Assembly (NCBI RefSeq): GCF_006345805.1
Contig: NC_043014.1
Span: 49,538,001-49,602,000 of the forward strand
Direction: 5' to 3'
From: Octopus sinensis
Lineage: Eukaryota
Length of the DNA stretch: 64,000 nt
Shown: one piece after another, positions 825 through 39,169 of the stretch
Position numbering within the stretch: position 1 is the stretch's first letter
How the letters are laid out: every line of letters begins with the position of its first letter
The notes under the pieces: generated by a model
What the model saw: the letters and a program-made list of their open reading frames with translations, nothing else
What the model was told of the DNA's origin: nothing
The model's database searches: none
Translations under genes and position numbers: made by a program

Positions 825-866
<42 letters not shown>

Positions 867-1921: not shown

Positions 1922-1985
<64 letters not shown>

Positions 1986-2397
1986 TGTGCACTCCTTCTC
2001 TATCACACTTAATCTTTCATCAGCTGACACAAGATCACCTCCAACGTCACATACCCTCTCAAAGGGTCATTGTCTTGCAAGTTAATTGGTGACCCTGCTA
2101 GTGCTGGTGCCACATAAAATGCATCCAGCCCACACTGTAAAGTGGTTGGCATTTGGAAGAGCATTCAGCTGTAAAAAAAACCATGCCAAAACTGACCTCA
2201 CCTGTGCTGGTGCCACACAAAATTACTCTGTCCACCCTGCTGGGTGGTTGGTGTTAGGAAGAGCATCCAACTGTAAACACCATACGAAAACAGACAGCAA
2301 AGCATGGTGCAGCCTTCTTCCTAGCCAGCTCCTGTCAAACCATCCAACCCATGCCAGCATGGAAAGCAGCCATTAAATGATGATTATGATGATGATG

Positions 2398-2428
<31 letters not shown>

Positions 2429-4581: not shown

Positions 4582-4626
<45 letters not shown>

Positions 4627-11079: not shown

Positions 11080-12409
11080 TGTCGAAGGAATGTTGTGAAA
11101 TAACAGCTAATTAAGAGTTAATTATGCCATTAATTGATATATTCCTGGCTTTTATGGGTTTGCAAAGAATTACCACCCGGTTCCTTCGTCTCAAAAACAC
11201 ACTTGCATACAAAGTCAGATAACTATTCACATGGTTCACATACTTAGTAAATTCGTATGTTGTGGTTTTTAAAGTGCTTTATTCTATTTTCTGTCTCAAA
11301 TATGAAGCTTAGAATATTTTTGGGAAAGAAATTGAACCACTATACTGTGAACAACTTTTACAAGCGGCATTAAAAACTAAAGATCAAATTAAAACCAAAT
11401 AAATTGAAATGGCTGTAACCGGGAATCGAAACCGGGTGGCGGAACAACCGGCTTGTTCGGTAACGGCATTGTTTTACATAATTCGTTCAGTGTCAATAAA
11501 GAAACGTTTTTAAAAATGTAAGAGTAACAAGATCTTATATTGTCTCCAATGTGATATGTTCTCGAAAAATAACTAAAAATTAAAATAAACTTTGATGATT
11601 TTTTAAGAGCAGAAGTTGTTTGGGAGGAAAGAAAAAGTAAGAGTTACCTCCCATAGCAATGGGAACTTTTTTTTAACTTAAATGGTATTTTGGTAAGAAT
11701 ATTTTTTATCAAAGTGAAAATAACTTTTGATAAGGACAAAAAAAAAGAGAGAGACAGGGCAAAGAAAGAAAATTAAAGAATAATTAAAATTTCTACTACC
11801 CACTCCAAAAAAATTAGATGTATGACATATTAATATTTTATATTCAATATTTCATCTATTTAATAAGACAATCTATACTTCATTTCATTTTACTATATAT
11901 ATTATTTATACTATATATTCTATATTCTACATTAAAACTATAAAGAATATAAATAAAACATAAAAACAGACAGTTAGAATTTCTTTGGGTAACATATATA
12001 TATATATATAAATTAAATTAGATAAAACCACTATTAGGGAACTCAAACAGTGATTTAATTTATATTTATACTGTGAAATTTGATTTAATCCTAAATCTAA
12101 TTTTTCCCTGTAAGTTTGGATATGCTCCCTAATATTATTATTATTATTATTATATTATTATATATCGAAATTTAAAATGTTTGAATATCAAAATATATAA
12201 TCAGAAATAAAAATATAACTATTAAAAAAATGTAGTTATTTTACAAGAAAAATAAAAATTCCTTTATTTGTCAAAATATACTCCTTTTAAATACGTAATT
12301 AATTTTTAAAACAATTTTTGTATTCTTGTTTTGGGATCAAAAAAGTACGAATGACAGATTAAGAGTTTGCATCTTTATTTTCGAACAAGTCTCGTGGTGA
12401 CGACTCGAC
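11080..12409. promoter_or_regulatory. Intergenic region between divergent INTS8 and Morgue starts; putative bidirectional promoter
   Basis: 1.33 kb between opposed ATGs, with none of the common SINEs. Two short CpG-rich patches (about 11410-11490 and 12385-12425) flank an extremely AT-rich spacer. Transcription starts are not observable. Confidence 0.55.
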
Positions 12410-12481
12410 ATGACGGCCGTCGGGTTTTGTAAAATGAGTTTAAAGTTCCATGTCGATGTTTGGGAATTTCTAGAACCCGAG
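12410..12481 (+). CDS. morgue: Morgue probable coding exon 1
   Basis: ATG in a CpG patch; [24 protein letters not shown], then a phase-0 GTAATG donor matching the phase-0 acceptor at 18076. No recalled homology, and the ATG at 12434 is an alternative start. Confidence 0.6.
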
Positions 12482-12774
12482 GTAATGTCTCTAGCCACAT
12501 TATACATTTATCCATGCTACGTTATACGCTCTGTCAAGCCTCGTAGAGATTTGTGGCCGGGCTTTTTGCTATTTCATCTAAAATGCTTGCTTCATTAGGG
12601 GAGGTTTTCAAAATTCTTTAATTGTTATTTTTGTTTTTGTCGATTTGTGTTTAAGAATTGATGTTTTCTCGTTAATTGAATAATTTCCTGATGCACAATT
12701 AATGCTACTTTACACACACATACACCAAATACATTTATGCGTATATACGTATTGGCGATCTTTCTCCAGATCGC

Positions 12775-12808
<34 letters not shown>

Positions 12809-13003
12809 ATACTTATGAAAGATGCTTTCTACGTTTTAAGTTTATAGTAAAACCCCACTTAATCTATTAACCTCCGTTTTTGTAGTTTTTCACTGTAATC
12901 TAGTATTATAGAGGACAACATAGCGAGTATATATGTATGTATATGTGTGTGTGCATATATATATTTATATATATATATATGCACATATATATATATATAT
13001 ATG

Positions 13004-13044
<41 letters not shown>

Positions 13045-13619
13045 AGAGTTTACGAAAAAAACGAAAGACGAAGACAAGGTGGTGTACAAAACAAACAGAT
13101 GTATTAGTATAAAGCTCAGGAATAGAGCTTTTTACGTTTCGAGCCTACGCTCTTCTTCGGAAAGGGACACAGAAAAAACAAGGAGAGAATATATATATAT
13201 ACATACACACACGCATACGCGGATGAGCTTCTACCAAGTGGTTGCTAGTCCGACAGATAATAGCAGCCAAATTTCTTTATTCCACATACCCCCATCGTCC
13301 TAATCTGAGAAAGACCCATTGTAAAGTAACATTCCTTAGATACAATTAAAAACATGGACTGTCATGCATTTGACGATACTCGACACGGTTGACTTGGGGT
13401 TAAACAACACACACACACACACACGTGTGTGTGTTATTCGTTTACATAGTTTTTAATAGTCGTAAATTATGTCTAAATATATTGTTTGTTTATCAAAACC
13501 ATCACTCGAGATACGAACATCTTTCTAGACAGTAAAAAACATGTCCATGTTTGCGTGTATTATTATGCATGTAGTGCTGTATTTTTCCGTAACGTTTCCT
13601 TGATTTCGTGTAAAGAATC

Positions 13620-13655
<36 letters not shown>

Positions 13656-16600
13656 TCCTTGTATTGTTTGTCTTGTACTCTGTTTTTTCGTTGTTAAAAA
13701 AAGTTCGTTTCCATGTTTGTTTTTATGTTTTCGTTTCTCGTCGAGTTCTACGTCTAATTGTGGTGTCCTGTACTCATATATATTTATATGCATGTATATA
13801 CACATGTAGATGTAGGTACGTACATATATGTATGTATGCATATATTTTATTTATTAAATTATATATATATATATATATATATCCGTAATAATGAAGGGTG
13901 AAATTAATTAATTTGGAAAAATTATCAATTACACCAAGTAGTCTTCGGCATGTAAAAGCCTCATTCGAGGAAAATTTAAGTAATACTAAGCAATAAGGGT
14001 TTAGCAACGAGTTGCCTTACCACATACCGAATTTAGAAATAGCAGTCAAAGGGTTATAGCTATTTAGCTATAACCCTTTGACTGCTATTTCTAAATTCGG
14101 TATGTGGTAAGGCAACTCGTTGCTAAACCCTTATTGCTTAGTATATATATATATATATATATATAGTGTGTGTACACATATAGAGATCACCCAAAATCTT
14201 TTACAAGACTTGTGTTTGTCAAGTGAAGAGTCATTTTTTTTTATAAGAATATATTCACTCTACGTTATGTATTGAGTACTTCACCTTAAATTGCAGTTCT
14301 TGTATGTTTCTAAGTGGGAACATACAACGAATATAATTACTTCTCACACATTCGTTTTCCGTGCTCCTATCCATAAGTCGACGTATCTTCACATTCCGAG
14401 ACAGTTCTGACGCACGGCTTTATAGCCTCTCTCATATTATTCCCTGTGGCATGATTTCTGCTACTGGACACTCTTCTTAATACCAGCATCTTTATAGAGT
14501 TTTCTGAATACAGTTTATCATGGCCACTACTGGAGACTATGCCACCATCATTGTTTTAGTGTCCACTTTTGCATGCTTGTATGGGTCAGAGATTTCTGAG
14601 GCAAATTTTTCTGTGGTCTGATGCCCTTCCTGTTGCCAACCCTTACCTGTTTTCGAGCAAACCCTATGGCCAGACATGTTTCCATAGACTATTAGAATTC
14701 TTATAGTTATATGCGTGTATATATGTATGTATATATGTATTGGTGTGTGTGTGTGTTTGTTTCTCTTTGTCTTGACATGTAAGAGTTGTAATCCGATTGT
14801 CACCGTCATACAAGCTTACAAGCTGTGTCATTCATTTACACGATTCCAGGACGAGTAGACACATGTACACACACACACGTGTGTGTACATGTAGGTGTAT
14901 GTATATATATATAACAGGTTTCTTTTAATTTCCACCTGCCAATTCACTCAAAAGCTTTGGTGAACTGGGCTGTGGTAGAAGAAACTTGCCCAAGGTGCCA
15001 CACTGGGACTGAACCTGAACCTCTGTGGTTGGGGAGCAAACTTTCTTAACCACACAACTACACCTGCACCTAAACATGTCCTCAACAAAATTGAAAGGTC
15101 ATCTCAAACTCTACATTTTCTCCTTTTGTTCAACAACCACTTTACAGAGAATATTGGGTGTGTTTTATTAAGGTACTGGTACAAGTGCATTCACCTTGTA
15201 CCTGGTTGCATGCAATATTTGTGATGTGAAAAATGAGTCAAAAGTAGTGGGTAGGGGCACCTAGAAATAGTAGCCAAATCTCCCTCAAAATCACACACTA
15301 CTCATCTTCAAAAGGGAAGCAGACATCTATCCATACTTTTCTGTCTTCAGGGGTAAAAAAAAGGTGTTAGTGGAGGTCACATTTGGAATGTATTGTCCTA
15401 ATATATTACTTACTGAAGAAGAAGATTGGATGGTCATAGCTGGAATACCTTTCATTATAAGTCTGTTGGATCAGAGCTGACCTGGGGCTAAACACCCAAT
15501 GTTTAGCTGTATGGCAAGAACTTTGCCTCCCAGCCACATAGTTCCCGGTTCAGTTCCACTGTTTGGCACCTTGGGCAAGTGTCTTCTACTATAGACTTGG
15601 GTTGACCAAATGTTTGAGTGGATTTGGTAGGTGGAAACTGAAAGAAGCCCATCGTATGTGTGTATGTCTGTCTGTCTGTCTCCCACCACCACTTGACAAC
15701 TGGTGCTGGTTTGTTTACATCCTCATGACTTAGCAGTTCAGCAAAATGGTCTGCTAGAATAAGTGCCAGGCTTAAAGAAATAAGTCCTGGGGGGTCAATT
15801 CATTTGACTAGAAATTCTTCAGGGCGGTGCTCCAGCATGGCCACAGTATAATAACTGAAACGAGTAAAAGATAAAGGACAAAAATCCTTACTAAATGCTG
15901 TCTTTAAAGAAGAATGCAAGCAATGTTTGGTATTTGTATTCGGCAGACAGAAGCCAGGTTGGTAATTGGGGTGACTATCTGTTAAATGGTGTTATTATTA
16001 TGAAACCTCTGTGTGGTTGGTCAGCCTGCAGAAATAGCAGCCAAATCACCTTCAAATTTCACCCTACTTACTATTTTAACCCTTTTGTTACTAACCCGGC
16101 CAAAACCGGCTCTGGCTCTGTGGTAAAATGTCTTGTTTTCATAAGTTTTGAATTAAAATCTTCCACCAAACCTTAGTCACAATTTATGTTCCTAACACTA
16201 GCTGAATGATAACTAAGTTATTTTACTAAATTCCTTGTTATATTTAAAGTAATTGAAAGAAACACAGAGCATCTCAACAGAAATACAGTAATGAAAGGGT
16301 TAAAATATATAATAGAGAAACAATTCTTAACCCTTTTAATACCAACCCAGCTGAAACCACTTCTGGCTCTGTAGTACAAATGTCTTGTTTTCATAAGTTT
16401 TTAATTAAAATCTTCCACCAAACCTAAGTCACAATTTATATTCCTAACACTAGCTTAATGATAACCAAGTTATTTTACTAAATTCTTTATTATATTTAAA
16501 GTAACTGAAAGAAACACAGAGCATCTCAAAATAAATACAGTAAGGAAAGGGTTAATACTAGAAATAACAAGGGTCATTTGTGATCCCTTTCAATGATTAA

Positions 16601-19600
16601 ACTCTTTTTCAGTAGCATGAAGCTTGTGAAAATTAGGATGTTGCACTTCTATAAGTTTTCAATGAAAGACTGTGTCCGAAATGCTATGCCTTTACTCTTT
16701 AACTTTTTTTTCCTTCTCCGAACATCAAACTAATAATATTTATTTCTTTATTGCCCACAAGGGGCTAAACATAGAGGGGACAAACAAGGACAGACAAAGG
16801 GATTAAGTCAATTACATTGACCCCAGTGCGTAACTTGTACTTATTTAATCGACCCCGAAAGGATGAAAAGCAAAGTCAACCTCGGCGGAATTTGAACTCA
16901 GAACGTAGCGGCAGACGAAATACCTATTTCTTTACTACCCACAAGGGGCTAAACACAGAGAGGACAAACAAGAACAGACAAAGGGAGTAAGTCGATTACA
17001 TCGACCCCAGTGCGTAACTGGTACTTATTTAATCGACCCCGAAAGGATGAAAGGCAAAGTCGACCTTGGCGGAATTTGAACTCAGGACATAGCAGCAGAC
17101 GAAATACCTATTTCTTTACTACCCACAAGGGGCTAAACACAGAGAGGACAGACAAAGGGATTAAGTCGATTACATCGACCCCAGTGCGTAACTGGTACTT
17201 ATTTAATCGACCCCGAAAGGATGAAAGGCAAAGTCGACCTTGGCGGAATTTGAACTCAGAACGTAGTGGCAGACGAAAATGCTGCTAAGTATTTCGCCCG
17301 GCAGGCAAACGCTTCTGCCAGTTCGTTGCCTTGATTCAAACTAATAATATTTATTGTGATCACCTCTTGGGCTTTTGCTATTTGCATTTGCTTTGCTTTA
17401 TGTGTATATATGTGTATGTGTGTGCTCAACACTGCATTTGGTGGATAAATATTTTTTATGGATTTATAATGCTACCAATGGTTTCAAGTGACTCACTTGA
17501 AAATTGTGGAGATTTTTTCCAAATGAAACTGTTGGTAGTATTAGTCATCCACGAATAAAGACTGTATATACAGGAGGGGGGAGAAGGGGAAGTTTCTGTT
17601 ACTATTTAATTATATATTTCTTTATTGCCCACAAGGGGCTAAACATAGAGGGGACAAACAAGGACAGACAAAGGGATTAAGTCGATTACATCGCCCCCAG
17701 TGCGAAACTGGTACTTTATTTATCAACCCCGAAAGGATGAACGGCAAAGTCGACCTCAGCAGAATTTGAACTCGGAACATAATGACAGACGAAATACCGC
17801 TAAGCATTTCGCCCGGTGTGCCAACGTTTCACCCAGCTCGCCGCCTTATTAATAAGGCTACCAATGGTTTCAAGTGACTCACTTGAAAATTGTGGAGATT
17901 TTTCCAAATGAAACTGTTGGTAGTATTATTGATCCACAAATAAAGACTGTATATATGGTGGGGGAGAAGGGGAAGTTTCTGTTACTATTTAATTATAATA
18001 ATCATGATGATTGATGAACTTGACACAAAATGTTTCTCTTTTTATTTCTTCTTTTTCTCCTTGTCTTCCTTTCAGTACCCCACCTGTTCCATGTGCAGTG
18101 GGTTCTATAGCAATAACTTTGGACAGCCTATATGTGGAACATGCCATTTATTCTTGTTCTCTTATGACATCAACAAAGATGAGGACGAACAACAAGTCTA
18201 CACAGAAGTAAGTAGAAATTCTCTCTATTTCTTGGAGGGGGCCACTGTAGAGGAAGGGGGCGGAGTCCTCAAGAAATCAAGTCCAAAACGTTATTTCAAC
18301 CCCTGTTTTTGGTAGGGGTTTTTTATGGCTGTGCGAGAGGTGGAAAGAAAGATTCTGAACCTTTACATGACCTCTGATACAGGTGTTGGGGGTGAAGCAG
18401 CTTATCAAAGAAAAACTGCTGAGATACTTTCAGGTCAGACATCTGGCCTGAATTCTTGCAAGAATGGACATGGTCAAAACCACCCAACCGACATCCTTCC
18501 ATCATCATCATCTCTTTTCTGTACTTGCTTAGGTCGGACAGAGTTTCATTGAAGTATAAGAAATGACTGGATCTCCTTCTTGCTGTTGACCCTCATCTCT
18601 TTCCAAGCAAGAGAATATTTCCCCATGTTTGTGCAGAATATTGGAAATTAATGTGGCTTTAATGACAGACAATCATTTACAACTGTCATGTGATGTCAAG
18701 ACAAGGTACACAAACATACACACACACACACATACACATTATATATATATGAGCACCATCCGAGCGTGATTATTGCCAGAGCAGCTAACTGGCTTCCGTG
18801 CCGGTGGCATGTAAAAAGCACCATTCGAGTGTGATCGTTACCAACGTTGCCTTAATGGCACTTGTGCCGGTGGCACGTGAAAAATCATTTGAACGAGGTC
18901 ATTGCCAGTGCCGCTGGACTGGCTCCTGTGCAAGTGGCACGTAAAAAACATCATTTGAGCGTGGCCGTTGCCAGTACCACCAGGCTGGCCCTCGTGCAGG
19001 CGGTACGAAAAAGCACCCACTACACTCTCGGAGTGGTTGGCGTTAGGAAGGGCATCCAGCTGTAGAAACTCTGCCAGATCAGATTGGAGCCTGGTGCAGC
19101 CATCTTGTTTGCCAGTCCTCAGTCAAATCATCCAATCCATGCTAGCATGGAAAGCAGACGTTAAAGGATGATGATGATGATATATATGGTAGGCTTCTTT
19201 TCAGTTTTTGTCTACCAAATCCACTCACAAGGCTTTGGTTGGCCCTGGGTTGTAGTAGAAGGCATTCATCCCAGGTGCATGTGATGAGACTGAACCTTTA
19301 ACAATAATTCTTTTATAAATTTTTTCAGTGATTTTTTTTTTTTTTCCGTTTTTTCTCCACTTCCAGAAAGCCGATTCAGATGATTCTGGCAATGAGGAAC
19401 CAGATGCCGCAGCTGATTTCTACACTCAGAAAGATAAAAGAACTCACGTAGTGAAATCCCATTCTCACAAAATGGACAAACTAACCGAAAGGATTACTTC
19501 TCTAACTATTGCTCGGGACACTGACAAAGAATCTATTCCTGAAGGTCTTGTAGACTCTCTGCCACCCGAAGGTACCAAAATTCTTAACCCTTTACCATTC

Positions 19601-21850
19601 AGTGATTTCTCCATCATCTCTCTTAACCCTTTTGATACCAACATGCCCTGAACTACTCTTAGTTTCATGTTACAAAATTCATGTTTTAAAATTATCTAAA
19701 TTAAAACCTCCCATCAAAATTTAATGTTAGGTCATCTTCCAAACTCCAGCTTTATAATGAGAAAAGAATTTTTACTGACAAGTAAACAAGAAGTAATAAT
19801 AATTCTATCCCCCTAGCATTGCATGACAACCGATGCTGGTGTGTTGACGTCCCCGTCACTTAGCGGTTCGGCAAAAGAGACTGATAGAATAAGTACTGGG
19901 CTTACAAAGAATAAGTCCCAGGGTTGAGTTGCTCGACTAAAGGCGGTGCTCCAGCATGGCCGCAGTCAAATGACTGAAACAAGTAAAAGAGAAAGAGAAA
20001 AGAGAATCAAATAAATTAGTGCATGTGTTTATTGGCAAAATGTGAAGCTTACAATCGTGAGGCTGTGAGTTCGATTCCCAGACCAAGCTGCATGCTGTGT
20101 TCTTGAGCCAGACACTTTATTTCACATTGCTCCAGTTCACTCAGCTGTAAAAATGAGTTGTGATGTCACTGGTGTCGAGCTGCATCAGCCTTTGCCTTTC
20201 CCTCAGATAATATCAGTGGCCCTCATGCTGGTGGCACCCACTACACTCACGGAGTGGTTGGCGTTAGGAAGGACATCCAGCTGTAGAAACTTTGCCAGAT
20301 CAGATTGGAGCCTGGTACAGCCTTCAAGCTTGCCAACCCATGCCAGCATGGAAAGCAGACGTTAAACGACAATGATGATGATAATGATGATAGACAAATA
20401 GATGTAAATCTCTCTTCTTGAGACAGCATTCACCTGGGGTAGGTTGAGCTGGCTTCATTCACCCTCAATGCTGCATCTCTTACAAACGCCAACCAGGCCT
20501 GGCGATTTGAGGCTAATGACCACATGATCTCCAACCACTCCTTATTCCAGCGGCGAACGCCATAGATATGGGGCCTAGATTGGGTTCCAGATCAGCCTTG
20601 ACTGTCATCAGTCAGGTTTTTCATTGTCCACCACATTGCTTTTGCCAACGGGGCAACTGCTTCGTAGATGAATTCTCTTGGCTGATGATGGAGGGCATGA
20701 CCCAGCCAACGCAGACGTCTCATTAGGATGACTTGTCGGAGGGAGGTGATTCTGCACTGGTGTCGCACCGAATTCATCATCATCATCATCGTTTAACGTC
20801 CGTTCTCCATGCTAGCATGGGTGACAAAGTGATGCCATCGGACACAAAGGATGCAGCGTAGACAGAGGTGATCGAAGGATTCTAGTCGCTTAATATCTTC
20901 CACCCTCATCGGCCATGACTCGCTGCCATAAAGGAGAATCGTTTGCACTAGATATAAATACATCACTATTACTACTAAGTTTCATCTCTCTCATCTCTAC
21001 TCACCATTATTAGTAGTTTCTTCTATATCGTTTCTATTTACCTACTATTACCGGTAGCTTCCCCCGTCTCTCATTTATTTATCTATTCCTCTTTACACAG
21101 TATTACTGGTAGTTTTCCGTCACCTTGACGATATCTCACGATGGATGGCCGGCAATGTATGTTCGAGATGGTGGCAGATCCTCGATGCCGAAACTACACA
21201 AACCCAGTGGAAACATTTCATCAGCCTCCGTTGGCCTCTTTTCCGACCGTATTACAAAGTGAAGTGTTGGAAAACGATATATTCAAAACTGTGAGTATTC
21301 TTGAAATCAATACAAATCTTGTCATTTTATTTAATGTTTTACCAAAACCTCTCTGTTGTGGAACCTGATGCCTGAAGATATGTTATACACAGGGGAGTTG
21401 GTTTCAGTGACTAGATGTGACTTCAAGGTCTGTTGTTCCAGTGATCATATGTTCTTACCATACAGCACACAGTGGTATGTTGTGATAAGAAGCAGCGAGC
21501 TGGCAACTCCTCATATCTTCTGTGTGTATATATAATATATATAATAAAATTATTGTATACAGTGCTCATGTGCACCACAATTTGTCAGAAAGTGCGTATA
21601 AAGCATTTGCAGTAATGTACAAATGTCTGGAAAGCGAACAATGTATGAGTCAGATACATGCTTGTGTGTGTATGGAGGGGAGAAAATCAGGCGAATCTCA
21701 GGAAGCATGGAAGTTTTGAAGGATGCAGTGCTCCGACAACTAACAACTGATGCCGGCAGTTTGTTCCATGCTTCAGCAACTCTCAGCATGAAAAAATGTT
21801 TCCTAAAGTCATGGGAGCTGTGCTGTTTTCTGACTTTGTAAATATGTATG

Positions 21851-21889
<39 letters not shown>

Positions 21890-24800
21890 TAAGATAGATA
21901 TGTAGACAGACAGACGCACACTTTCTGTTTCTATCTTCTAGACTGACTCACATGGTTTTGGTAGGCCCAGGGCTATAGTAGAAAACAATTTTCTAAAGTA
22001 CCATGCTGGAACTATGTGGTTGAGAAGTAATCTTGCCACACAGCCAAGCAGATCATCTTCATTTAGTTTCTGCTTTCCATGCTGGCATGGGTTGGACAGT
22101 TTGTCTACAACTGGTAAGCTGGAGAGCTGGACCAGGTTCCAGTCTGGTTTTGGTTTGGTTTCTACAGCTGGATGCCCTTCCTAACACCAACCACTCCAAG
22201 AGTGTAGTGGGTGCCTTTTATGTGTCACCGACACAGGTGCTTTTATGTGTCACCAGCTCTGGTGCCTTTATGTCACTGGCACCATCCACAACTACGATCT
22301 CACTTGGCTTAATGAATCTTCTCAAGCACAGCAAATCGCCACGCATGATATAGTGTTGGGCCCACGACCATATGGTCTTGAGTTTGATTCCTGGATCAGG
22401 TAGCATATTATGTCCTTAAAAGAAGGCGCTTCATTTCAACTTTGCCTGGTCAGCTGAAAATTAATATTTATTTCTATTTCTTTACTGCCCACAAGGGGCT
22501 AAACACAGAGAGGACAAACAAGGACAGACAAAGTTATTAAGTCAATTACATCGACACCAGTGCGTATCTGGTACTTAATTTATCGACCCTGAAAAGATGG
22601 ACGGCAAAGTCGAACTCGACGGAATTTGAACTCAGAACGTAACGGCAGACGAAATATGGCTAAGCGTTTCGCCCGGCATGCAAACGATTCTGCTACGATT
22701 CTGCTAGCTCGCCGCCTTTGAAACTTAATACCAGCCTGTGTTGGTGTAGCCCTCTCTTTCCCTCCAACATGCTTGGTGTTCCACTGAAACATACATCAAG
22801 GGATGGGAGGACCAAGGGACAGTCTGTGTCTTCTCACATCTACATCATCATCATCATCATCATCGTTTAACGACCGCTTTCCATGCTAGCATGGGTTGGA
22901 CGATTTGACTGAAGGCTGGCAACCAGATGGCTGCATCAGGCTTCAATCTTGATCTGGCAGAGTTTCTACAGCTGGATGCCCTTCCAAACACCAACCTTCT
23001 CTGAGAGTGTAGTGGGTGCTTTTTACATGCCACCGGCACGGGGCCAGTCAGGCGGTACTGGCAACAACCTGGCTCGAATCTTTTACACATGCCACCGACA
23101 CAGGTGCCAGTAAGGCGATGCTGGTAATGAACACACTCAATGGTGCCTTTCATGTGCCACTGGCACGGAAGCCGGTTAGCCACTCTAGGTACCTAAAACA
23201 ATTAAGAAAAGCATCATCATCATCGTTTAACGTCCGCTTTCCATGCTAGCATGGGTTGGACGGTTCAACTGGGGTCTGGGAAGCCAGAAGGCTGCATCAG
23301 GCCCAGTCTGATCTGGCAATGTTTCTACGGCTGGATGCCTTTCCTAACGCCAACCACTCCATGAGTGTAGTGGGTGCTTTTTACGTGCCACCGGCACAGG
23401 TGCCAGACAGAGCTGGCAGACGGCCACGGACGGATGGTGCTTTTTACGTGCCACCGGCACAGGGGCCAGGCGAGGCTGGCAACGGCCACGAACGGATGGT
23501 GCTTTTTACATGCCACCAGCACAAACCACAAATCACAAACCACAAAGTCAGACATGCTTGTGAATGATGGCTGTGGTTCTTTGGTATGTGTCTGTGTGTC
23601 ATTGGATAAATATGTACCAGAATGTATTTTCGTTTAGCTTAGTCATCTTGGTTTATCATTTTTCTCCTTTGCAGACTAGAGAGTTCACCATGCCGTTATT
23701 GTTTGGAAAGTATGATGCTTCAGGTAACCGAAACTCCTTGTTTTATATATTTATTTATTTTATTTTTTATTTCATTTTTCTGTTACGTTGCCAAGAAATT
23801 TGGCACAGTTCCCTAATGATGTTTAACCCTTTCGTTACCAACCCAGCTGAAACCAGCTCTGGCTCTGTAGTACAAATGTCTTGTTTTCATAAGTTTTGAA
23901 TTAAAATCTTCCACCAAACCTTAGTCACAATTTATGTTCCTAACACTAGCTGAATGATAACTAAGTTATTTTACTAAATTCTTTGTTATATTTAAAGTAA
24001 TTGAAAGAAACACAGAGCATCTCAAAATAAATACAGTAACGAAAGGGTTAAAGTTGTCTCCCCCACTCACACCCCACACTTGTGAGATAATGTGCTTGAT
24101 CTTCAGTTTGGATATGGGTGAGGAAGGGTTAAGGTTAGAGTTTAGCAATGACATACTTGAGCATACTGCTGAGTATGAAGGCTCATGGCTCAGTGGTTAG
24201 AGTATCAGGCTCACAATCATGAGGTAGTGAGTTCGATTCCTGGACCGGGCTTTGTGTTTTGTTCTTGAGCAAGACACTTTATTTCACACTGCTCCAGTTC
24301 ACTCATCTGTAGAAATGAGTTGTGACATCACTGGTGCCAAGCTGTATATCAGCCTTTGCCTTTCCCTTGGATAACATCGGTGGTGTGCAGAGGGGAGGCT
24401 GGTATGTATAGACAGTTGCTGGTCTTCCATAAACAAACTTGCTTGGACTTGTACTTCAGAGAGGAACTTTCTAGGTGAAATCCTATGGTCATTTATAACC
24501 AAAGGGGGTTTTTACCCTTTACCCTGAGAAATAAGACTCAACATAGGGAACAAGATGGGAAAGACAAAGCCTGAGTGTTTGAAGAGCATTTAGATAATTA
24601 ACGAAGAGGAGCTTTCCATGCTAGCATGGGTTGGACGGTTTGACTGAGGACTGGCGAACCAGATGGCTGCATCAGGCTCCAGTCTTGATCTGACAGAGTT
24701 TCTACAGATGGATGCCCTTCCTAACAACAACCACTCCGAGAGTGTAGTATTGGATGTTTTACGTTCTGAGTTCAAATTCCGCCGAGGTCGACTTTGCCTT

Positions 24801-25516
24801 TCATCCCCTCGGGGTCGATGTAATCGACTTAATCCCTTTGTCCTTGTTTGTCCCCTCTATGTTTAACCCCTTGTGGGTAGTAAAGAAATATATAATAATA
24901 ATGAAATTATTGTATACAGTGCTCAGGTGCACCACAACTTGTCAGAAAGTGCGTATAAAGCATATGCAGTAATGTACAAATGTCTGGGAAGTGAACAGTG
25001 TATGAGTCAGATACATGGCTTGCGTGTGTATGGAGGGGAGAAAATCAGGTTTAGTGTTGGTGAATCTCAGAAAGCATGGAAGTTTTGAAGGATGCAGTGC
25101 TCCGACAACTAACAACTGATGCCGGCAGTTTGTTCCATACTTCAGCAACTCTAGCGTTTAACATCCCTTTGAAGGAATTAGGTCCTTATTTCTACTATAT
25201 ATATATATATCACCATGACCAATGACCAACCAGACTATCAGATGTTGCTACACATCGCTGGTCACAATGCGCTTCGCATTGTTTTAGCTTTCAAATGATG
25301 CCACCCCACTGGCTAAGCGAGCAGGCCAACAGAAGAAAGAGTGAGAGAAAGTTGTGGCGAAGGAGTACAGCAGGGATCGCCACGAGCCCCTGCCGGAGCC
25401 TTGTGGAGCTTTAGGTGTTTTCGCTCAATAAACACTCGCAACGCCCGGTCTGGGAATCAAAACCACGATCCTACGACCATGAGTCTGCTGCCCTAACCAC
25501 TGGGCCATTACACCTC

Positions 25517-25553
<37 letters not shown>

Positions 25554-25749
25554 TATAGAAGGAGCTTCTACAGGACTAGAACTGTTTCATTCAGATGAAA
25601 TCTTCAGGAAGCTTCAGGGCTTCCTGAAGATTTCATCTGAATGAAACAGTTCTAGTCCTGTAGAAGCTCCTTCTATAAAATAAATTACTTTACTCTGCTA
25701 TGTATTGAGTACCTTATTTACTGTGGTTAACCCGACTCAACCCGGGACC

Positions 25750-25792
<43 letters not shown>

Positions 25793-26505
25793 ACAATTGA
25801 GGGTAAAATTAATTAATTAATCAATTTCACCAAGTGTTCAGTATGTAAAAGGACCTATTTAAGGCAAATTCAAAATATTACATTATATAATTATATAATG
25901 TAATATATAAATATATATATACACACATACACAACAGGCTTCAATACAGTTTATTGAATTTCATTTATGAGCCATTAGTAGACCCAAGGCAATAGTAAAA
26001 AACACACATACAAAGTACTGCACAGTGGGATGGAACCTGCTACTATATTGTTGCAAACTTCTTAACCAGCCAGCCTGCCATGCTTGTGTCTATAAGACAT
26101 TATAACGTTTAGTTTTTGTTTGTACCTGGCAGGTTTCTAAACCAGCATGGTCCATATGTAACACAGTAAGTACCTCTGTTAGCTTCCATGCTTTCTTACA
26201 TAACACATGCTAACCAGTTACCTGACATGTGTTTCTAAACTGCTCAGTTTTCAAATTGCTATTATTGACTTTGGGGTTTTCTTTTTTTGTCTTTGCTAAT
26301 TAATGATTCGCTAATTTTGTTCCAGTCATTTGACTGCGGCCATGCTGGAGCACCACCTTTAATCGAGCAACTCGACCCCGGGACTTATTCTTTTTGTAAG
26401 CCCAGTACTTATTCTATCGGTCTCTTTTGCCGAACCGCTAAGTAACGGGGACATAAACACACCAGCATCAGTTGTCAAGCAATGCTAGGGGGACAAACAC
26501 ACACA

Positions 26506-26574
<69 letters not shown>

Positions 26575-29435
26575 TACGACGGGCTTCTTTTCAGTTTCCG
26601 TCTATCAAATCCACACACAAGGTTTTGGTCGGCCCGAGGCCATAGTAGAAGACACTTGCCTAAGGTGCCACGCAGTGGGACTGAACCCGGAACCATGTGG
26701 TTGGTAAACAAGCTACTTACCACACAGCCACTCCTGCACCTAGAGACCGATAGAATAAGTTCTGGGCTTACAAAAAGAATAAGTCCCGGGGTCGAGTTGC
26801 TCGATTAGAGGCGGTGCTCCAGCATGGCCGCAGTCAAATGACTGAAACAAGTAAAATGAGTAAACTCATTATTTTCTTCAGCGTTTTAACATCTGACGGC
26901 AGGAGTGGAACTGGTCTAAACCAAATCTGATTCCACTCCCACTCTGTCTCTAATGCTGTCCCCTCTGCCTCCAGTACCAGCCACTCTGCTCTAGTGGTGA
27001 CCCTTGACAGCATGAAATGTAAATTTGACTTTGTTGGGATTTGAACTCAGGGTTTCAACCTGCATACACTTCACCATCATTTTATTTACTTCCCATTTAC
27101 CAGAAGACACTCTTCTTCCTCTATATGAAAAGTGTATTTATGTGTGTGGGTCTGGGTGTGGATTTGAGCTTCTTCGACTGTTTCTGAGTAATCCAATAGG
27201 GCAACAGCCAGAAGCTTTATACATACGTCTATCCGTCCGTCAGATGGATGGACAGACGTTAAATGAGGATGATGATATATCATCATCATCATCATCATTT
27301 AACGTCCGCTTTCCATGCTAGCATGGGTTGGACGATTTGACTGAGGTCTGGCGAACCAGAATCCAATCTGATCTGGCAGAGTTTCTACAGCTGGATGCCC
27401 TTCCTAACACCAACCACTCCGAGAGTGTAGTGGGTGCTTTTACGTGCCACCGGCACGAGGGCCAGTTTGGTGGTACTGGCAACGGCCACGCCCAAATGGT
27501 GCTTTTTACGTGCCACCTGCAGAGGAGCCAGTCCAGCGGCACTGGCGACGACCTCACTCGATATTTGTATATACACACACATACACACAAGCACAGTCTT
27601 TTCATATAAAGAGGAAGAAGGATTCTTTATTACCTCCAAGAGTATCAGTTCCCTTAACTCCTTTACTCACATCAAGTCCTAACCACTAAGCCATCACTTA
27701 CTCCACCTCCCAGCATTAATCTTTATCTAAATGCTCAATTATATACCATTTGCAACAAACCATTAAAGACATTTTCATAGTCTTCAGTACCTAGCTGCTT
27801 ATGTACAACTTTAAAGGTCTTGTCCTTAACCCTTTAGTGTTCAGATTACTCTGTTAATTGTAATATGTTTTTCATTCAAATTGTTTTGAATTAATCATGC
27901 ATTATCTCAGAGCTTTGCGGTTTCAATGATGTGATTGCTTATTTTTAGAATGTCAATGTAAGCTAGGTGTGAGAGGCTAGATATCACCAGTTTGAATATA
28001 AAACATGTAGAATATCTGGGCCAGATATGGCTGGTTTAACCCTTTAGTGTTCAGATTATTCTTTCAAACATAATGCCTATTGATTCACATTGATTTGAAT
28101 TAATCATGCATTATCTCATATCTTCAAGATCTTGATGGTGTAATTACTTCATGTAGAATAACATTGTAGGGTAGGTGTGAGGGCCTGGATCTGGTCAGTT
28201 TGAACAAAAACAGATTAAATTTTTTGGCCAGATATGGCCGGTTTAAATACTAAAGGGTTAAACACTAAAGGGCTAAATCAGACTACTAGGAACCCTTTTT
28301 GGGAACCTGTGCCCTACTCTTTTTGTCACTAATTCTTTTTAGTAATCACTTACTGCTTGTTCCTCATTTTTGTCATTAGCATCTTAGCTGTGTTCATCTT
28401 CTGTAATTGGTGTCTAATTCCCCGTCTTTGTATGTATTATATATAAAAACAGGTAGTTGTGTATTTGTTCAAACTGGCAAAGGGTAAGAAAAGCTTCAAG
28501 ACAATTGGAATGAAACAATGTTGTAGATACTTATTTCATTACTACCCACAAGGGTACTACCTACACAGAGAGGACAAACAAGGGCAGACAAACGGATTAA
28601 GTCGATTATATCGACCCCTGTGCGTAACTGGTACTTAATTTATCGACCGTTATTTGTCGGGTCTTCGCAGTCACAGCATATCTCCAGAGGTCTCGGTCTT
28701 TCGTCATTGCCTCTGTGAGGCCCAACGTTCGAAGGTCATGCTTGACCACCTCATCCCATGTCTTCCTGGGTCTACCTCTACCCTGGATTCCTTCAACTGC
28801 CTGGGAGTGGCACTTCTTCACACATCTCTCCTCATCCATCCATAGTACATGACCTTACCAGCGCAGACGTCTCTCTTGCACGCCACATCCGATGCTTCTT
28901 ATGTCCAGCATTTCTCTCAGGGCGCTTACACTCTGTAACTGGTACTTAATTTATCGACCGTTATTTGTCGGGTTTTTGCAGTCACAGCATATCTCCAGAG
29001 GTCTCGGCCTTTCGTCATTGCCTCTGTGAGGCCCAACGTTCGAAGGTCATGCTGTGAGGCCCAACGTTCGAAGGTCGTGCTTGACCACCTCATCCCATGT
29101 CTTCCTGGGTCTACCTCTACCCTGGATTCCTTCAACTGCCTGGGAGTGGCACTTCTTCACACATCTCTCCTCATCCATCCGTAGTACATGACCATACCAG
29201 CGCAGACGTCTCTCTTGCACGCCACATCCGATGCTTCTTATGTCCAGCATTTCTCTCAGGGCGCTTACACTCTGTCGTGTGTGCACACTGACATTACACA
29301 TCCAGTGGATCATGCTAGCTTCATTTCTTTCAAGCCTACGCATGTCCTCCGCAGTCACAGCCCATGTTTCACTACCGTGAAGCATGGCAGTTCGCAGACA
29401 TGCGCCGTACAATCTACCTTTCACTCTGAGCGTTG

Positions 29436-29474
<39 letters not shown>

Positions 29475-30704
29475 ATAATTTTTCTTTTTTATCTGCAGAG
29501 CACACCTCCTATCAAAGAGAATTCCTGGCGTCACAGAAGATTACGAAGTGAATTGAAGACCTTAAAGACAGACCCACCTGAAGGTATTCAAGCAACACCA
29601 TTAGACCAAAACTGCTGCCATTGGCAGGCTTCAATCACTGGACCCCAGGGAAGTCCATATGAAGGCGGTCAGTTCTTATTGTACCTACAGATTCCAGACA
29701 GGTGAGTTGAAACATTTCTAGGACATTCTTTTATATCATAATATCAGATTTATAATGAATGCTGTTGTTTAGTCCTGACCATGTGGATCTATGACCAAAG
29801 ACATTCCAACTGTGACTATCCCGTCTTTAATTCGGGCATAGCATATCTGGGAGCACACTATCTAATGTACAGTATAGTAATTAAAATGAGTGGCTATAAT
29901 TGTTTTTTTTTTGTTGTTGTTTAGCCCTGGGTCAATCCTGGTCATGTGAACCTCTATTCAAAGGTGTTCCAACTGTGAACACAGTGCAGTTGTTTAGCCC
30001 CCAAGTCAATTCTGATCATGTAGATCTAAGCTCTGTATTCCTACCATGACCATCACTTTTGTATAGATGGTTATTATATATAAGACATATTGTGAAGGCA
30101 CGTGGCTTAGTGGTTAGGGTATTCAGTTCGCAATCATAAATTCGATTCCTGGTGGTGTGTTGTGTTCTTGAGCAAGACACTTCATTTCACATTGCCCCAT
30201 TTCACATTTCACACACAATATACTCTTTACTTTTACTTGTTTCAGTCATTTGACTGCGGCCATGCTGGAGCACCGCCTCTAGTCGAGCAAATCGACCCCG
30301 GGACTTATTCTTTGTAAGCCCAGTACTTATTCTATCGGTCTCTTTTGCCGAACCGCTAAGTGACGGGGACATAAACACACCAGCATCGGTTGTCAAGCAA
30401 TGCTAGGGGAACAAACGCAGACACACAAACACATACACACACATACATATATCATCATCATCTAACGTCCGCTTTCCATGCTAGCATGGGTTGGACGGTT
30501 CAACTGGGGTCTGGGGAGCCCGAAGGCTGCACCAGGCCAGTCAGATCTGGCAGTGTTTCTACAGCTGGATGCCCTTCCTAACGCCAACCACTCCGAGAGT
30601 GTAGTGGGTGATTTTATGTGCCACCGACACAGGTGCCAGACGAGGCTGGCGAACGGCCACGCTCGGATGGTGTTTTTATGTGCCACCGACACAGGTGCCA
30701 GACA

Positions 30705-30757
<53 letters not shown>

Positions 30758-31532
30758 TATATACATATATATACGACAGGCTTCTTTCAGTTTCCGTCTA
30801 CCAAATCCACTCGCAAGGCATTGGTCGGCCCGGGGCTATAGCAGAAGACACTTGCCCAAGATGCCACGCAGTGTGACTGAACCCGGAACCATGTGGTTGG
30901 TTAGCAAGCTACTTACCACACAGCCACTCCTGTGCCTCTGTGTGTGTGTGCTAGGTTTCTTCCAGTTTCCATCTACAAGGCTTTGGTCAGCCTGTGGATA
31001 TACACTTGCTCAAGATGCCACATGGTGGAACTGAATCGAAGACCACATGGTTGGGAAGCAAACTTCTCGACCACGCAGCCATACTATTAAGTATTCATCT
31101 AACCCATGCTGACATAGCAAAATGAACATAAAGCAAATGAACGCATGTGTGTGTATGTGTATGTGTCTCTTTCTATTGTCATTATATCTTACAGTGTTTC
31201 TCCATCTGTTTTTTTTTTCCAGTTACCCCATGAAACCCCCAAAAGTGCGTTTTATCACGAAAATATTCCATCCCAACATCAGCCGCCACGGAGACATCGG
31301 TCTTGATTCTATTCACCACAACTGGAGTCTGGCATTGACTATTTCCAAAGTTCTCATTAGCATCCAGTCCCTGTTGACCGATCCTTACTGCCACGTGTGT
31401 ATGGAGCCAACGATCGGTCGACTTTACGTGAGCGGCCGACAGGAGTTTGAGCGGATTGCCCGGCTGTGGACCTGGAAGTATGCCATGCACGACTATCTCA
31501 TGCCAACTGACATAAATATGAACGGATTGTGA
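12410..31532 (+). CDS. morgue: Morgue-like protein: Cys4 zinc finger, F-box, and E2-variant domain with Gly replacing the catalytic Cys (7 exons: 12410-12481, 18076-18207, 19367-19571, 21101-21290, 23675-23723, 29499-29701, 31223-31532)
   Basis: Exons join into 1161 nt (386 aa plus stop) with GT-AG introns and matching phases. Motifs are CSMC-x12-CGTC; F-box [15 protein letters not shown]...VCSRW; UBC fold GSPYEGG...[29 protein letters not shown], where canonical E2s have HPN...G-x-ICLD. This domain combination defines Drosophila Morgue. Confidence 0.9.
13983..14144. repeat. Perfect palindrome with arms of about 80 bp
   Basis: 13983-14062 is the reverse complement of 14065-14144. Confidence 0.95.
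16077..16555. mobile_element. Two adjacent piggyBac-type MITEs (third copy at 23824-24050)
   Basis: Each copy of about 225 bp is TTAA|CCCTT...AAGGG|TTAA with a shared internal sequence. Confidence 0.8.
16740..17335 (-). mobile_element. Tandem trimer of Nin/Deu-domain-like SINE family C (other copies at about 10200-10395, 17615-17850, 22470-22720, 35935-36170, 44985-45210, 58620-59090)
   Basis: Core GAGTTCAAATTCCGCCGAGGTCGACTTTGCCTTTCATCCTTTCGGGGTCGATAAATTAAGTACCAG; superfamily assignment is from memory. Confidence 0.8.
18076..18207 (+). CDS. morgue: Morgue exon 2 (zinc finger)
   Basis: TTTCAG acceptor, GTAAGT donor; [27 protein letters not shown]...VYTE. Confidence 0.88.
19367..19571 (+). 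CDS. morgue: Morgue exon 3
   Basis: [13 protein letters not shown]...VDSLPPE; phase-1 donor. Confidence 0.85.
20420..20770 (-). mobile_element. Degenerate RTE-like LINE fragment
   Basis: [18 protein letters not shown]. Confidence 0.6.
21101..21290 (+). CDS. morgue: Morgue exon 4 (F-box)
   Basis: [28 protein letters not shown]...[21 protein letters not shown]; ACAG acceptor, GTGAGT donor. Confidence 0.9.
21545..21845 (-). mobile_element. CR1-like LINE 3' end (second copy at about 24895-25155)
   Basis: [31 protein letters not shown] followed by a TAA-rich tail. Confidence 0.8.
23675..23723 (+). CDS. morgue: Morgue exon 5
   Basis: 49 nt, [16 protein letters not shown]; TTGCAG acceptor, GTAACC donor; bridges phase 2 to phase 0. 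Confidence 0.82.
25551..25760. mobile_element. Penelope-like pseudo-LTR fragment with a 62-bp perfect inverted duplication, flanked by (TA)n
   Basis: 25551-25612 is the exact reverse complement of 25619-25680, with a 6-nt spacer; contains the hammerhead motif. Confidence 0.65.
25619..25667 (+). ncRNA. Type I hammerhead ribozyme motif (Penelope-associated); identical opposed copy on the minus strand at 25564-25612
   Basis: Stem I GCTTC/GAAGC; core CTGAAGA; short stem II TTC/GAA; GAAA; stem III ACAG/CTGT; GTA cleavage triplet. Stem II is closed by a non-canonical U-U. Confidence 0.7.
27826..28260. mobile_element. Second piggyBac-type MITE family, tandem pair (relatives at about 33020-33244 and 54560-54712)
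   Basis: TTAACCCTTTAGTGTTCAGATT...AATACTAAAGGGTTAA. Confidence 0.7.
28641..29435 (-). mobile_element. RTE-clade LINE 3' fragment with a tandem duplication
   Basis: LHGSETW...[20 protein letters not shown]...[13 protein letters not shown]...DRDLWR; the 3' segment occurs twice. Confidence 0.9.
29499..29701 (+). CDS. morgue: Morgue exon 6 (start of UBC/UEV fold)
   Basis: [25 protein letters not shown]...[18 protein letters not shown]. Confidence 0.93.
31223..31532 (+). CDS. morgue: Morgue exon 7 (UEV active-site region and stop)
   Basis: [54 protein letters not shown]...TGA at 31530-31532. Confidence 0.94.
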
Positions 31533-38200: not shown

Positions 38201-39169
38201 AAAAATTGTAAAATAAAATTTCCATCATTAAATTGTAATGTTTTTTTTGTCTTTTTTTTGTGAATAGTAACCTTAAATGTTTGTTGTATTCTGACATTAG
38301 AAGCTGATAGGCAATTTGAGACCAAAAAAAACCCAAAGGGTTTTGGACACGTGTGTATGTGCCTATGTATATATACTCATTTTGCTTTGTAAATATGTCT
38401 ATACATGTCTTTTACTCTTTTACTTGTTTCAGTCATTTGACTGCGGCCATGCTGGAGCAGCGCCTTTAATCGAGCAACTCGACCCCGGGACTTATTCTTT
38501 TGTAAGCCCAGTACTTATTCTATCGGTCTCTTTTGCCGAACCGCTAAGTAACGGGGACGTAAACACACCAGTATCGGCTGTCAAGCAATGCTAGGGGGAC
38601 AAACACAGACACACAAACACACACGCACACACACATATATACATACATATATACAACGGGCTTCTTTTCAGTTTCCGTCTACCAAATCCACTCACAAGTC
38701 TTTGGTCGGCCCGAGTCTATAGTAGAAGACACTTGCCCAAGGTGCCACGCAGTGGGACTGAACCCGGAACCATGTGGTTGGTAAACAAGCTACTTACCAC
38801 ACAGCCACTCCTTTATATATGTGTGTATGTGAATCCATAATCATGCTGAATGCGAATGTATTATGTATGCATGTGTGTGTGTAAATATATATTTGTGTGT
38901 GTGTGTGTGAGTTCAGGGGGATATATTATCTGGGCGTGTACCCCGATAGTTCTCAATTAAATTCCAAAGGCATAGCAAAATATTATTTTACCAAAACCAA
39001 AAGATATTCACAAACTGTTACTCAGAGTTGCACATGACTGGTCGTCAGATAGTTGTGATTATCATAAGTGTCTGATGAAACTGACTAACAATTATTTACA
39101 TTGGACAGATAGGTGCCACCCCCTCAAAATAAGGGTAGATAAGAAAGTTCGTTTTCGGCACTTGATGCT

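What the first reader, a model, noticed from the sequence alone, without database searches (positions are those of the whole stretch)
12410..31532. Complete Morgue-type F-box plus catalytically dead E2 fusion gene hidden across 19 kb
Seen: seven exons, two of them not captured in frame by the ORF track, build one protein with a CxxC-x12-CxxC finger, an F-box and a UBC fold reading [13 protein letters not shown] (Gly at the thioester Cys position). Known: Drosophila Morgue has this architecture and Cys-to-Gly change, promotes DIAP1 turnover in apoptosis, and occurs patchily in invertebrates but not vertebrates. Inference: a cephalopod SCF adaptor with a built-in pseudo-E2 whose function in molluscs is, to my knowledge, untested. 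An extra CRYC motif (exon 5) and CHVC (exon 7) could be further metal sites.
Basis: partly seen in the sequence, partly recalled or inferred. Interest (0 to 1): 0.7.

Follow-up and report, generated by a model that had tools for sequence, protein, structure and literature searches.

The report
Octopus Morgue gene: F-box plus dead E2

Summary
Seven + strand exons between 12410 and 31532, all with GT-AG introns, splice into a 1161-nt frame of 386 aa. The protein has a CxxC-x12-CxxC finger, an F-box and a UbcH5-like UBC fold. Codon GGT (31299-31301) puts Gly where the thioester Cys should be.

The protein is identical to Octopus sinensis XP_029647648.1 (LOC115221585 isoform X2) and O. vulgaris CAI9737957.1, so it is not hidden. 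Intronless 1.5-kb contigs from sequencing-run assemblies, whose closest named match is a cuttlefish protein, break at the predicted junctions. Their coding differences are mostly synonymous (pS 0.92, pN 0.06).

Relatives named "morgue / modifier of rpr and grim" and 120 relatives from molluscs to hemichordates share the architecture. Gly is present in 121 of 121. All sequence-level defining features of Morgue are met.

The most likely function, by homology, is a SKP1-binding adaptor. Its inert E2-like domain would bind K48 polyubiquitin and/or RING partners such as IAPs. This is untested in molluscs.

That is a modest lead for a second metal site, which I could not test.

This is a new, unnamed member of a known family, and interest is low.

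The parts
12410..12481 (+). Exon 1: ATG and residues 1-24 ([24 protein letters not shown]). The donor is gtaatg.
   Evidence: It is identical to the N-terminus of XP_029647648.1. Cuttlefish and related cephalopod proteins have an N-terminus of the same length.
18076..18207 (+). Exon 2: residues 25-68. It carries the C4 zinc finger C28-x2-C31-x12-C44-x2-C47-H48, at 18085-18147.
   Evidence: The four Cys and the His are present in every aligned orthologue, and the spacer is 12 in 116/121. The boundaries match transcript contig L002.
19367..19571 (+). Exon 3: an acidic, disordered linker (residues 69-130) and the start of the F-box (LVDSLPPE, from 19553). It ends in phase 1.
   Evidence: AlphaFold pLDDT is below 50 for residues 64-67 and 81-104.
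21101..21290 (+). Exon 4: the rest of the F-box (to about 21183) and the Trp-rich helical linker, with W151, W160, W173, W181 and W193.
   Evidence: Pfam F-box-like covers residues 131-164. The region aligns to the Skp2 F-box. The five Trp are conserved in 111-121 of 121. The block boundaries match L002.
23675..23723 (+). Exon 5 (49 nt): [16 protein letters not shown], with the invariant CxxC (C206, C209) at 23691-23702.
   Evidence: C206 and C209 are present in 121/121 orthologues. The exon is 100% identical in O. vulgaris.
26133..26165 (+). Optional 33-nt cassette exon ([11 protein letters not shown]) between exons 5 and 6. It gives the 397-aa isoform X1.
   Evidence: It is flanked by ag and gtaagt and is identical in O. 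vulgaris. It is absent from the cuttlefish protein and from the transcript-like contigs' proteins.
29499..29701 (+). Exon 6: the N-terminal half of the UBC fold (helix 1 and strands 1-3; the Pfam UQ_con match begins at residue 230 = 29538).
31223..31532 (+). Exon 7: the C-terminal half of the UBC fold. It holds HPN (31269-31277), Gly310 codon GGT (31299-31301), CHVC (31389-31400) and the stop TGA (31530-31532).
   Evidence: Gly310 is 121/121, HPN 120/121, H306 121/121, C343 119/121 and C340 105/121. The exon is 100% identical in O. vulgaris.

Best explanation
This is the octopus orthologue of Morgue. One gene of seven coding exons, plus one optional 33-nt exon, encodes a 386-aa protein. The protein has an N-terminal C4 zinc finger, a disordered acidic linker, an F-box with a Trp-rich helical extension, and a C-terminal UbcH5-derived UBC fold.

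In that fold the thioester cysteine is glycine. The domain therefore cannot carry ubiquitin on the canonical active-site residue and acts as a UEV (pseudo-E2).

The mechanism is inferred by homology with Drosophila Morgue. The F-box binds SKP1 and brings the protein into a cullin-RING (SCF-type) ligase. The inert E2-like domain, helped by the zinc finger, serves as the recognition module. It would bind K48-linked polyubiquitin and/or dock like an E2 onto RING proteins such as IAPs, promoting their ubiquitination and proteasomal turnover.

Shown here: the gene structure, the domain content, the Gly substitution, orthology and strong purifying selection. Inferred, not shown: SKP1 binding, ubiquitin or IAP binding, and any role in octopus cell death.
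For: - Gene model: the exons are in frame with six GT-AG introns.
- Database identity: the protein is identical to XP_029647648.1 and CAI9737957.1. The same locus in O. vulgaris is called as one gene between INTS8 and downstream DNA.
- Transcript support: intronless 1.5-kb contigs from four sequencing-run assemblies encode a 90%-identical 386-aa protein. Their blastn blocks end at my exon boundaries to within 3 nt, an overhang I attribute to chance extension.
- Selection: against that transcript pS is 0.915 and pN 0.062. Against O. vulgaris there are five coding differences, all synonymous.
- Domains: UQ_con 6e-42 and F-box-like 1.6e-6. The UBC part aligns without gaps to UBE2D2, with Gly at Cys85. 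The AlphaFold model superposes on UbcH5 with TM 0.95 and rmsd 1.3-1.6 A.
- Compactness: pTM 0.79, despite about 100 low-confidence residues, implies that finger, F-box and UBC are predicted as one compact body (my inference).
- Orthology: relatives are named morgue, and 121/121 have Gly.
- Drosophila data: Morgue binds SkpA through its F-box and binds K48 polyubiquitin through several regions. In vitro it associates with DIAP1 (PMC3787007).
- RING-contact positions of UBE2D2 remain hydrophobic or unchanged: F62 is M287, P95 is L320, A96 is A321 (alignment; the role of these residues is from my own knowledge of E2-RING structures).
Against: - No octopus RNA or protein data were available to me. 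Transcript support comes from a related cephalopod and from RefSeq models.
- In Drosophila the F-box is dispensable for the over-expression phenotypes, and G421A/C/S substitutions had no effect. [quoted passage not shown]
- HPN and Asp312 are retained, which is unusual for a purely inert UEV.
Confidence: 0.85

Rival explanations
1. It is the same gene, but it works mainly outside SCF complexes. On this view Morgue is a polyubiquitin-chain reader, or a UEV-type partner or inhibitor of active E2s (E4-like or deubiquitination-linked), and the F-box plays a minor or tissue-specific role.
For: In Drosophila, deleting the F-box did not change Morgue-induced lethality or enhancement of cell death. 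[quoted passage not shown] K48 polyubiquitin co-purified, and a yeast two-hybrid link to a deubiquitinase is cited (PMC3787007).
Against: The F-box and its five Trp are conserved across phyla (F142, L145, D147, W160, W173 and W193 invariant). SkpA is the main in vivo interactor in flies. Such conservation is hard to explain if SKP1 binding were unimportant.
Confidence: 0.25
2. The UBC domain is not dead. A conserved cysteine beside the former active-site cleft (C343, or C206/C209 from the linker) serves as a relocated nucleophile, helped by the retained HPN motif.
For: HPN is kept in 120/121 and Asp312 in 121/121. C343 is present in 119/121 and aligns with Pro118 of UBE2D2, in the loop that borders the active site. 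C206 and C209 are invariant.
Against: There is no precedent known to me. C343 is Ser in two orthologues. In flies, putting Cys back at the Gly position changed nothing in the assays used. HPN also has a structural role. I could not measure the geometry.
Confidence: 0.03
3. The model is an artefact that fuses two neighbouring genes, an F-box gene and an ordinary E2 gene.
For: 19 kb of repeat-rich introns separate the parts. Exon 5 is only 49 nt.
Against: Intronless contigs from sequencing-run assemblies carry the whole 386-aa frame. The same collinear architecture occurs in 121 orthologues from at least five phyla. Splice phases match only in this arrangement.
Confidence: 0.02
4. It is a decaying pseudogene, or the Gly is a sequencing error in an otherwise active E2.
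For: None beyond the missing Cys.
Against: The frame is intact. Synonymous sites are saturated while pN is 0.06. Exon 7 is identical in a second assembly. Gly is invariant in 121/121.
Confidence: 0.01

Closest known systems
Drosophila Morgue (modifier of rpr and grim, ubiquitously expressed) and its invertebrate orthologues
   Same: The domain order is the same: C4 finger, F-box, UEV. It shares the CX2CX12CX2C spacing, the five-Trp F-box region, Gly at the E2 active site and a retained HPN. Arthropod proteins named morgue are 50-60% identical over more than 70% of the octopus protein.
   Different: The octopus protein is short (386 aa) because the linker between finger and F-box is brief; many insect proteins are 500-570 aa. 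It has an optional 11-aa insert before the UEV. No functional data exist for any mollusc in the searchable literature.
UBE2D / UbcH5 (Drosophila effete) class of active E2 enzymes
   Same: The UBC domain is about 50% identical and aligns without gaps. The predicted fold superposes at rmsd 1.3-1.6 A. HPN, Asp87 and Trp93 equivalents are kept.
   Different: Cys85 is Gly. The loop N114-P118 is replaced by Y-C-H-V-C, and Asn81 is an invariant His. The domain is fused behind an F-box.
Classical UEV proteins (Mms2/UEV1, TSG101 UEV domain)
   Same: They also have a UBC fold without the catalytic cysteine and are used for non-covalent ubiquitin binding (as summarised in PMC3787007).
   Different: According to PMC3787007, no other UEV has Gly at the active-site position. 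From my own knowledge, those UEVs have also lost HPN, and the Mms2/UEV1 type are free-standing partners of Ubc13. Morgue's UEV is UbcH5-like and covalently tied to an F-box.
Canonical F-box substrate receptors (e.g. Skp2, FBXL5)
   Same: It shares the LPxE(V/I)LLxIFxxL F-box core that binds SKP1, seen in weak sequence alignments to the Skp2 (E = 0.07) and FBXL5 (E = 0.3) F-boxes.
   Different: The substrate-binding module is an E2-like fold rather than LRR, WD40 or another repeat domain.

Membership tests
Morgue | N-terminal C4 zinc finger with CX2CX12CX2C spacing | tested here: met
   C28-SM-C31-x12-C44-GT-C47 at window 18085-18144. The same spacing occurs in 116/121 orthologues. The feature is as defined in PMC3787007.
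Morgue | Central F-box, typically with five conserved tryptophans | tested here: met
   Pfam F-box-like scores 28.2 bits against a cut-off of 24.3, over residues 131-164. W151, W160, W173, W181 and W193 are present and conserved in 111-121 of 121.
Morgue | C-terminal UBC (E2) fold | tested here: met
   UQ_con 6e-42 over residues 230-366. The Foldseek TM-score to UbcH5 is 0.95.
Morgue | Glycine in place of the E2 active-site cysteine | tested here: met
   Gly310 (GGT, 31299-31301) aligns with position 85 of UBE2D2. It is Gly in 121/121 orthologues.
Morgue | All three modules on one polypeptide or transcript, in the order finger, F-box, UEV | tested here: met
   There is one in-frame seven-exon model. 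The identical RefSeq protein exists. Intronless transcript-like contigs of a related cephalopod carry the whole frame. No octopus cDNA was available.
Morgue | Orthology: closest relatives outside the clade are annotated Morgue proteins rather than ordinary E2s or F-box proteins | tested here: met
   Full-length hits (E 1e-120 to 1e-134) are named 'morgue' or 'modifier of rpr and grim' in insects and crustaceans. D. melanogaster Morgue itself was not among the 120 rows listed, so a reciprocal best-hit test against the fly protein was not run.
Morgue | Binds SkpA/SKP1 through the F-box | not testable with these tools
   This is shown only for Drosophila (PMC3787007).
Morgue | Binds K48 polyubiquitin, associates with DIAP1/IAP and promotes cell death | not testable with these tools
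   Drosophila data only. No mollusc study was found.
Active E2 ubiquitin-conjugating enzymes (UBC superfamily, catalytic members) | Catalytic cysteine that forms the ubiquitin thioester | tested here: not met
   Gly stands at the aligned position. The protein has the fold but is not a catalytic member, although several databases label its orthologues 'E2 ubiquitin-conjugating enzyme'.
Active E2 ubiquitin-conjugating enzymes (UBC superfamily, catalytic members) | HPN motif upstream of the active site | tested here: met
   H300-P301-N302 at 31269-31277, conserved in 120/121.
SCF substrate receptors (F-box proteins) | Assembly with SKP1-CUL1-RBX1 and substrate ubiquitination | not testable with these tools
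   Only the F-box sequence signature is shown.

The most novel reading that the evidence does not exclude
The 'dead' active-site region of Morgue may have been rebuilt into a second zinc site. The invariant linker pair C206/C209 sits at the start of a helix just before the UBC fold. It would join His306 and Cys343, which replace Asn81 and Pro118 beside the UBE2D active-site cleft. This CCHC centre would clamp the F-box linker over the cleft, and the invariant Gly310 would be needed for space. That would explain why this UEV alone has Gly, and why finger, F-box and UEV are predicted as one rigid body. The conservation is shown here. The geometry and the metal binding are not.
Probability: 0.3. 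Interest if true: 0.4.

Novelty: new member of a known kind. Interest (0 to 1): 0.2.

Why it matters
It matters little beyond annotation. The octopus locus LOC115221585, listed as 'uncharacterized protein' or mislabelled as an active E2, can be named Morgue. The family is shown to be intact and under strong constraint in cephalopods.

Two side points may help people who work on Morgue. First, full-architecture orthologues exist in hemichordates, so the gene predates the protostome-deuterostome split and was lost on the way to vertebrates. Second, a linker CxxC, His306 and Cys343 are as conserved as the hallmark Gly. This suggests a testable second metal site at the former catalytic cleft.

Morgue's biochemical mechanism is still unsettled in flies. 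A compact 386-aa mollusc orthologue could be a convenient protein for structural work.

Tried and rejected
- Second metal site: I predicted the structure to measure distances between C206, C209, H306, C340 and C343. The tool returns no coordinates, so the test could not be made. Correlated loss was uninformative, because C206, C209 and H306 never vary and C340 is lost on its own in 16 sequences.
- Zhou et al. 2009 (Mol Biol Evol), the paper on Morgue's phylogenetic distribution, is not held. Its content is cited only through PMC3787007 and my memory.
- Searches for Morgue in molluscs or cephalopods found nothing relevant.
- blastn of the transcript contig did not pick up the short, divergent exons 1 and 5. 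These rest on protein-level identity.
- The N-terminal half (finger, F-box and linker) has no solved relative beyond weak F-box matches. TGF-beta and cytochrome hits at E above 0.1 were dismissed as chance.
- Nested gene on the opposite strand: only repeat-derived and retrotransposon-like ORFs were found, with no Pfam hit. Rejected.
- Gene-fusion artefact, pseudogene and sequencing error were considered and rejected (see the rival explanations).
Full report
**What is in the sequence**

The window is eukaryotic, with long repeat-rich introns and microsatellites. Reading the DNA at each segment gives seven exons:

| Exon | Coordinates |
|---|---|
| 1 | 12410-12481 |
| 2 | 18076-18207 |
| 3 | 19367-19571 |
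| 4 | 21101-21290 |
| 5 | 23675-23723 |
| 6 | 29499-29701 |
| 7 | 31223-31532 |

Each intron begins GT and ends AG after a pyrimidine tract. The splice phases fit (0, 0, 1, 2, 0, 2). The joined sequence is 1161 nt, 386 codons plus TGA.

The claimed motifs are all present:
- CSMC-x12-CGTC lies in exon 2.
- [13 protein letters not shown] spans exons 3 and 4.
- CRYC lies in the 49-nt exon 5.
- [13 protein letters not shown] lies in exon 7, with GGT at 31299-31301.
- CHVC lies at 31389-31400.

**It is a real gene, and it is already modelled**

An exact-sequence look-up finds the 386-aa product in the public collection. It appears as XP_029647648.1 (uncharacterized protein LOC115221585 isoform X2, Octopus sinensis) and as CAI9737957.1 (O. 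vulgaris).

The O. vulgaris chromosome record OX597833.1 carries the gene as one unit beside INTS8. That record is 91-98% identical to the window across the aligned blocks. I take the window to be O. sinensis or another O. vulgaris-group assembly.

RefSeq isoform X1 has 11 extra residues. These map to a 33-nt cassette exon at 26133-26165, flanked by ag and gtaagt, and identical in O. vulgaris.

I had no octopus RNA. However, four assemblies of public sequencing runs hold intronless contigs of about 1.5 kb. They encode a 90%-identical 386-aa protein whose closest named relative is a cuttlefish (Acanthosepion pharaonis) protein. The blastn blocks of one such contig end at my exon boundaries to within 3 nt, an overhang I attribute to chance extension. 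F-box and UBC exons are therefore joined in mRNA of a related cephalopod.

Against that transcript, synonymous sites are saturated (pS 0.915) while pN is 0.062. Against O. vulgaris, the five coding differences are all synonymous. This is strong purifying selection. It rules out a pseudogene, and it rules out a sequencing error at the Gly codon, because exon 7 is identical in the second assembly.

**What it is**

Pfam finds UQ_con (6e-42, residues 230-366) and F-box-like (1.6e-6, above its cut-off, residues 131-164). The UBC part aligns without gaps to human UBE2D2 at about 50% identity, with Gly310 at the position of Cys85.

An AlphaFold model built on 121 orthologues has mean pLDDT 80.6 and pTM 0.79. 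Its UBC part superposes on UbcH5 structures with TM 0.95 and rmsd 1.3-1.6 A. About 100 residues are low-confidence, so a pTM of 0.79 implies that finger, F-box and UBC fold are predicted as one compact body. That is my inference.

The homology search returns full-length relatives from:
- gastropods, bivalves, annelids, nemerteans and a priapulid;
- chelicerates, myriapods, crustaceans and insects;
- two hemichordates.

Many arthropod entries are named 'morgue' or 'modifier of rpr and grim, ubiquitously expressed'.

**Membership**

PMC3787007 lists the family's hallmarks: a CX2CX12CX2C finger, an F-box with five conserved Trp, and a UEV domain with Gly at the active site. It states that no other UEV has Gly there. 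In my alignment of 121 orthologues:

| Feature | Conservation |
|---|---|
| Finger Cys and His | Present wherever aligned |
| Finger spacer of 12 | 116/121 |
| W151, W160, W173, W181, W193 | 111-121 of 121 |
| Gly310 | 121/121 |
| HPN | 120/121 |

All sequence-level defining features are met. The biochemical ones cannot be tested here: SkpA binding, K48 polyubiquitin binding and DIAP1 association.

**How it most likely works**

The mechanism below is inferred by homology. The F-box binds SKP1 and recruits the protein to a cullin-RING ligase. The inert E2-like domain, together with the finger, is the recognition module for K48 chains and/or for RING proteins such as IAPs.

Positions that contact RINGs in UBE2D2 stay hydrophobic or unchanged: F62 is M287, P95 is L320, A96 is A321 (alignment; the role of these residues is from my own knowledge).

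There is a caveat from the fly work. The F-box and the Gly are dispensable for the over-expression phenotypes. The authors state that true SCF function and a direct action on DIAP1 are not established. A non-SCF, chain-reader role is therefore a serious rival, at about 0.25.

**The extra cysteine motifs**

In CHVC, C343 is present in 119/121 and C340 in 105/121. His306, which replaces Asn81 of UBE2D2, is invariant.

C340 and C343 align with Pro115 and Pro118 of UBE2D2, in the loop beside the active-site cleft. A second CCHC zinc site that ties the F-box linker to the former cleft is therefore plausible. I could not test it, because no model coordinates are returned.

**Comparison and novelty**

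The closest known relative is Drosophila Morgue and its orthologues. The UEV domain derives from the UbcH5/effete class of E2s.

The family was described in flies. According to PMC3787007, it occurs in Lophotrochozoa, Platyzoa and Ecdysozoa. I found no paper on Morgue in molluscs or cephalopods. So the statement that its function there is untested stands, as it does for most octopus genes.

The gene is not hidden: an identical protein is already deposited.

**Verdict**

This is an unnamed but already modelled member of a known family, and interest is low.

Noticed in passing
window 1-11106, - strand (first coding exon about 10813-11079): The upstream neighbour is INTS8 (Integrator subunit 8) on the opposite strand. 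Its start codon at 11079 lies 1331 nt from the Morgue ATG, so the two genes are head-to-head and probably share a bidirectional promoter region.
   Followed up: partly
window 47215-54011, - strand: Exons of a cereblon (CRBN) orthologue lie downstream. They carry LON substrate-binding domain pieces, and two joined exons match human cereblon at E = 1e-29. Its 3' end points towards Morgue, so the two genes converge. It is another ubiquitin-ligase receptor; I assume the adjacency is coincidence.
   Followed up: partly
window 26133-26165, + strand: A 33-nt cassette exon adds [11 protein letters not shown] between the invariant CxxC and the UBC fold (RefSeq isoform X1 in O. sinensis and O. bimaculoides). 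It is identical in O. vulgaris but absent from the cuttlefish protein and from the transcript-like contigs' proteins. It may be an octopod-specific way to lengthen the F-box-to-UEV linker.
   Followed up: partly
window 3251-3639, 4415-4832, 38410-38812, 46868-47271, 54138-54548, 62983-63380; apparently similar copies inside the Morgue introns (e.g. 26475-26808, 30390-31034): A repeat family of about 400 bp, which looks SINE-like to me, has many copies on both strands. The listed copies are 86-94% identical to copies in the O. vulgaris locus. With (TA)n/(TATG)n microsatellites it fills much of the introns and generates most of the spurious ORFs.
   Followed up: no
window 28606-28839 and 28926-29424, - strand (intron 5): Two adjacent, partly duplicated ORF remnants (…[16 protein letters not shown]…[19 protein letters not shown]…[17 protein letters not shown]…). 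To me they look like the C-terminal part of a non-LTR retrotransposon ORF2, but there was no Pfam hit.
   Followed up: partly
proteins P0047 (Glandiceps talaboti) and P0082 (Saccoglossus kowalevskii): Hemichordates have full Morgue orthologues with the finger, the F-box, the linker CxxC and the active-site Gly. The family is therefore not confined to protostomes. It must predate the protostome-deuterostome split and have been lost in the line to vertebrates.
   Followed up: partly
database names: Many Morgue orthologues, including the O. vulgaris entry, are labelled as active enzymes. Examples are 'E2 ubiquitin-conjugating enzyme', 'UBE2O', 'SUMO-conjugating enzyme UBC9' and 'E2-17 kDa'. All of them lack the catalytic cysteine, so this is a systematic annotation error.
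   Followed up: no
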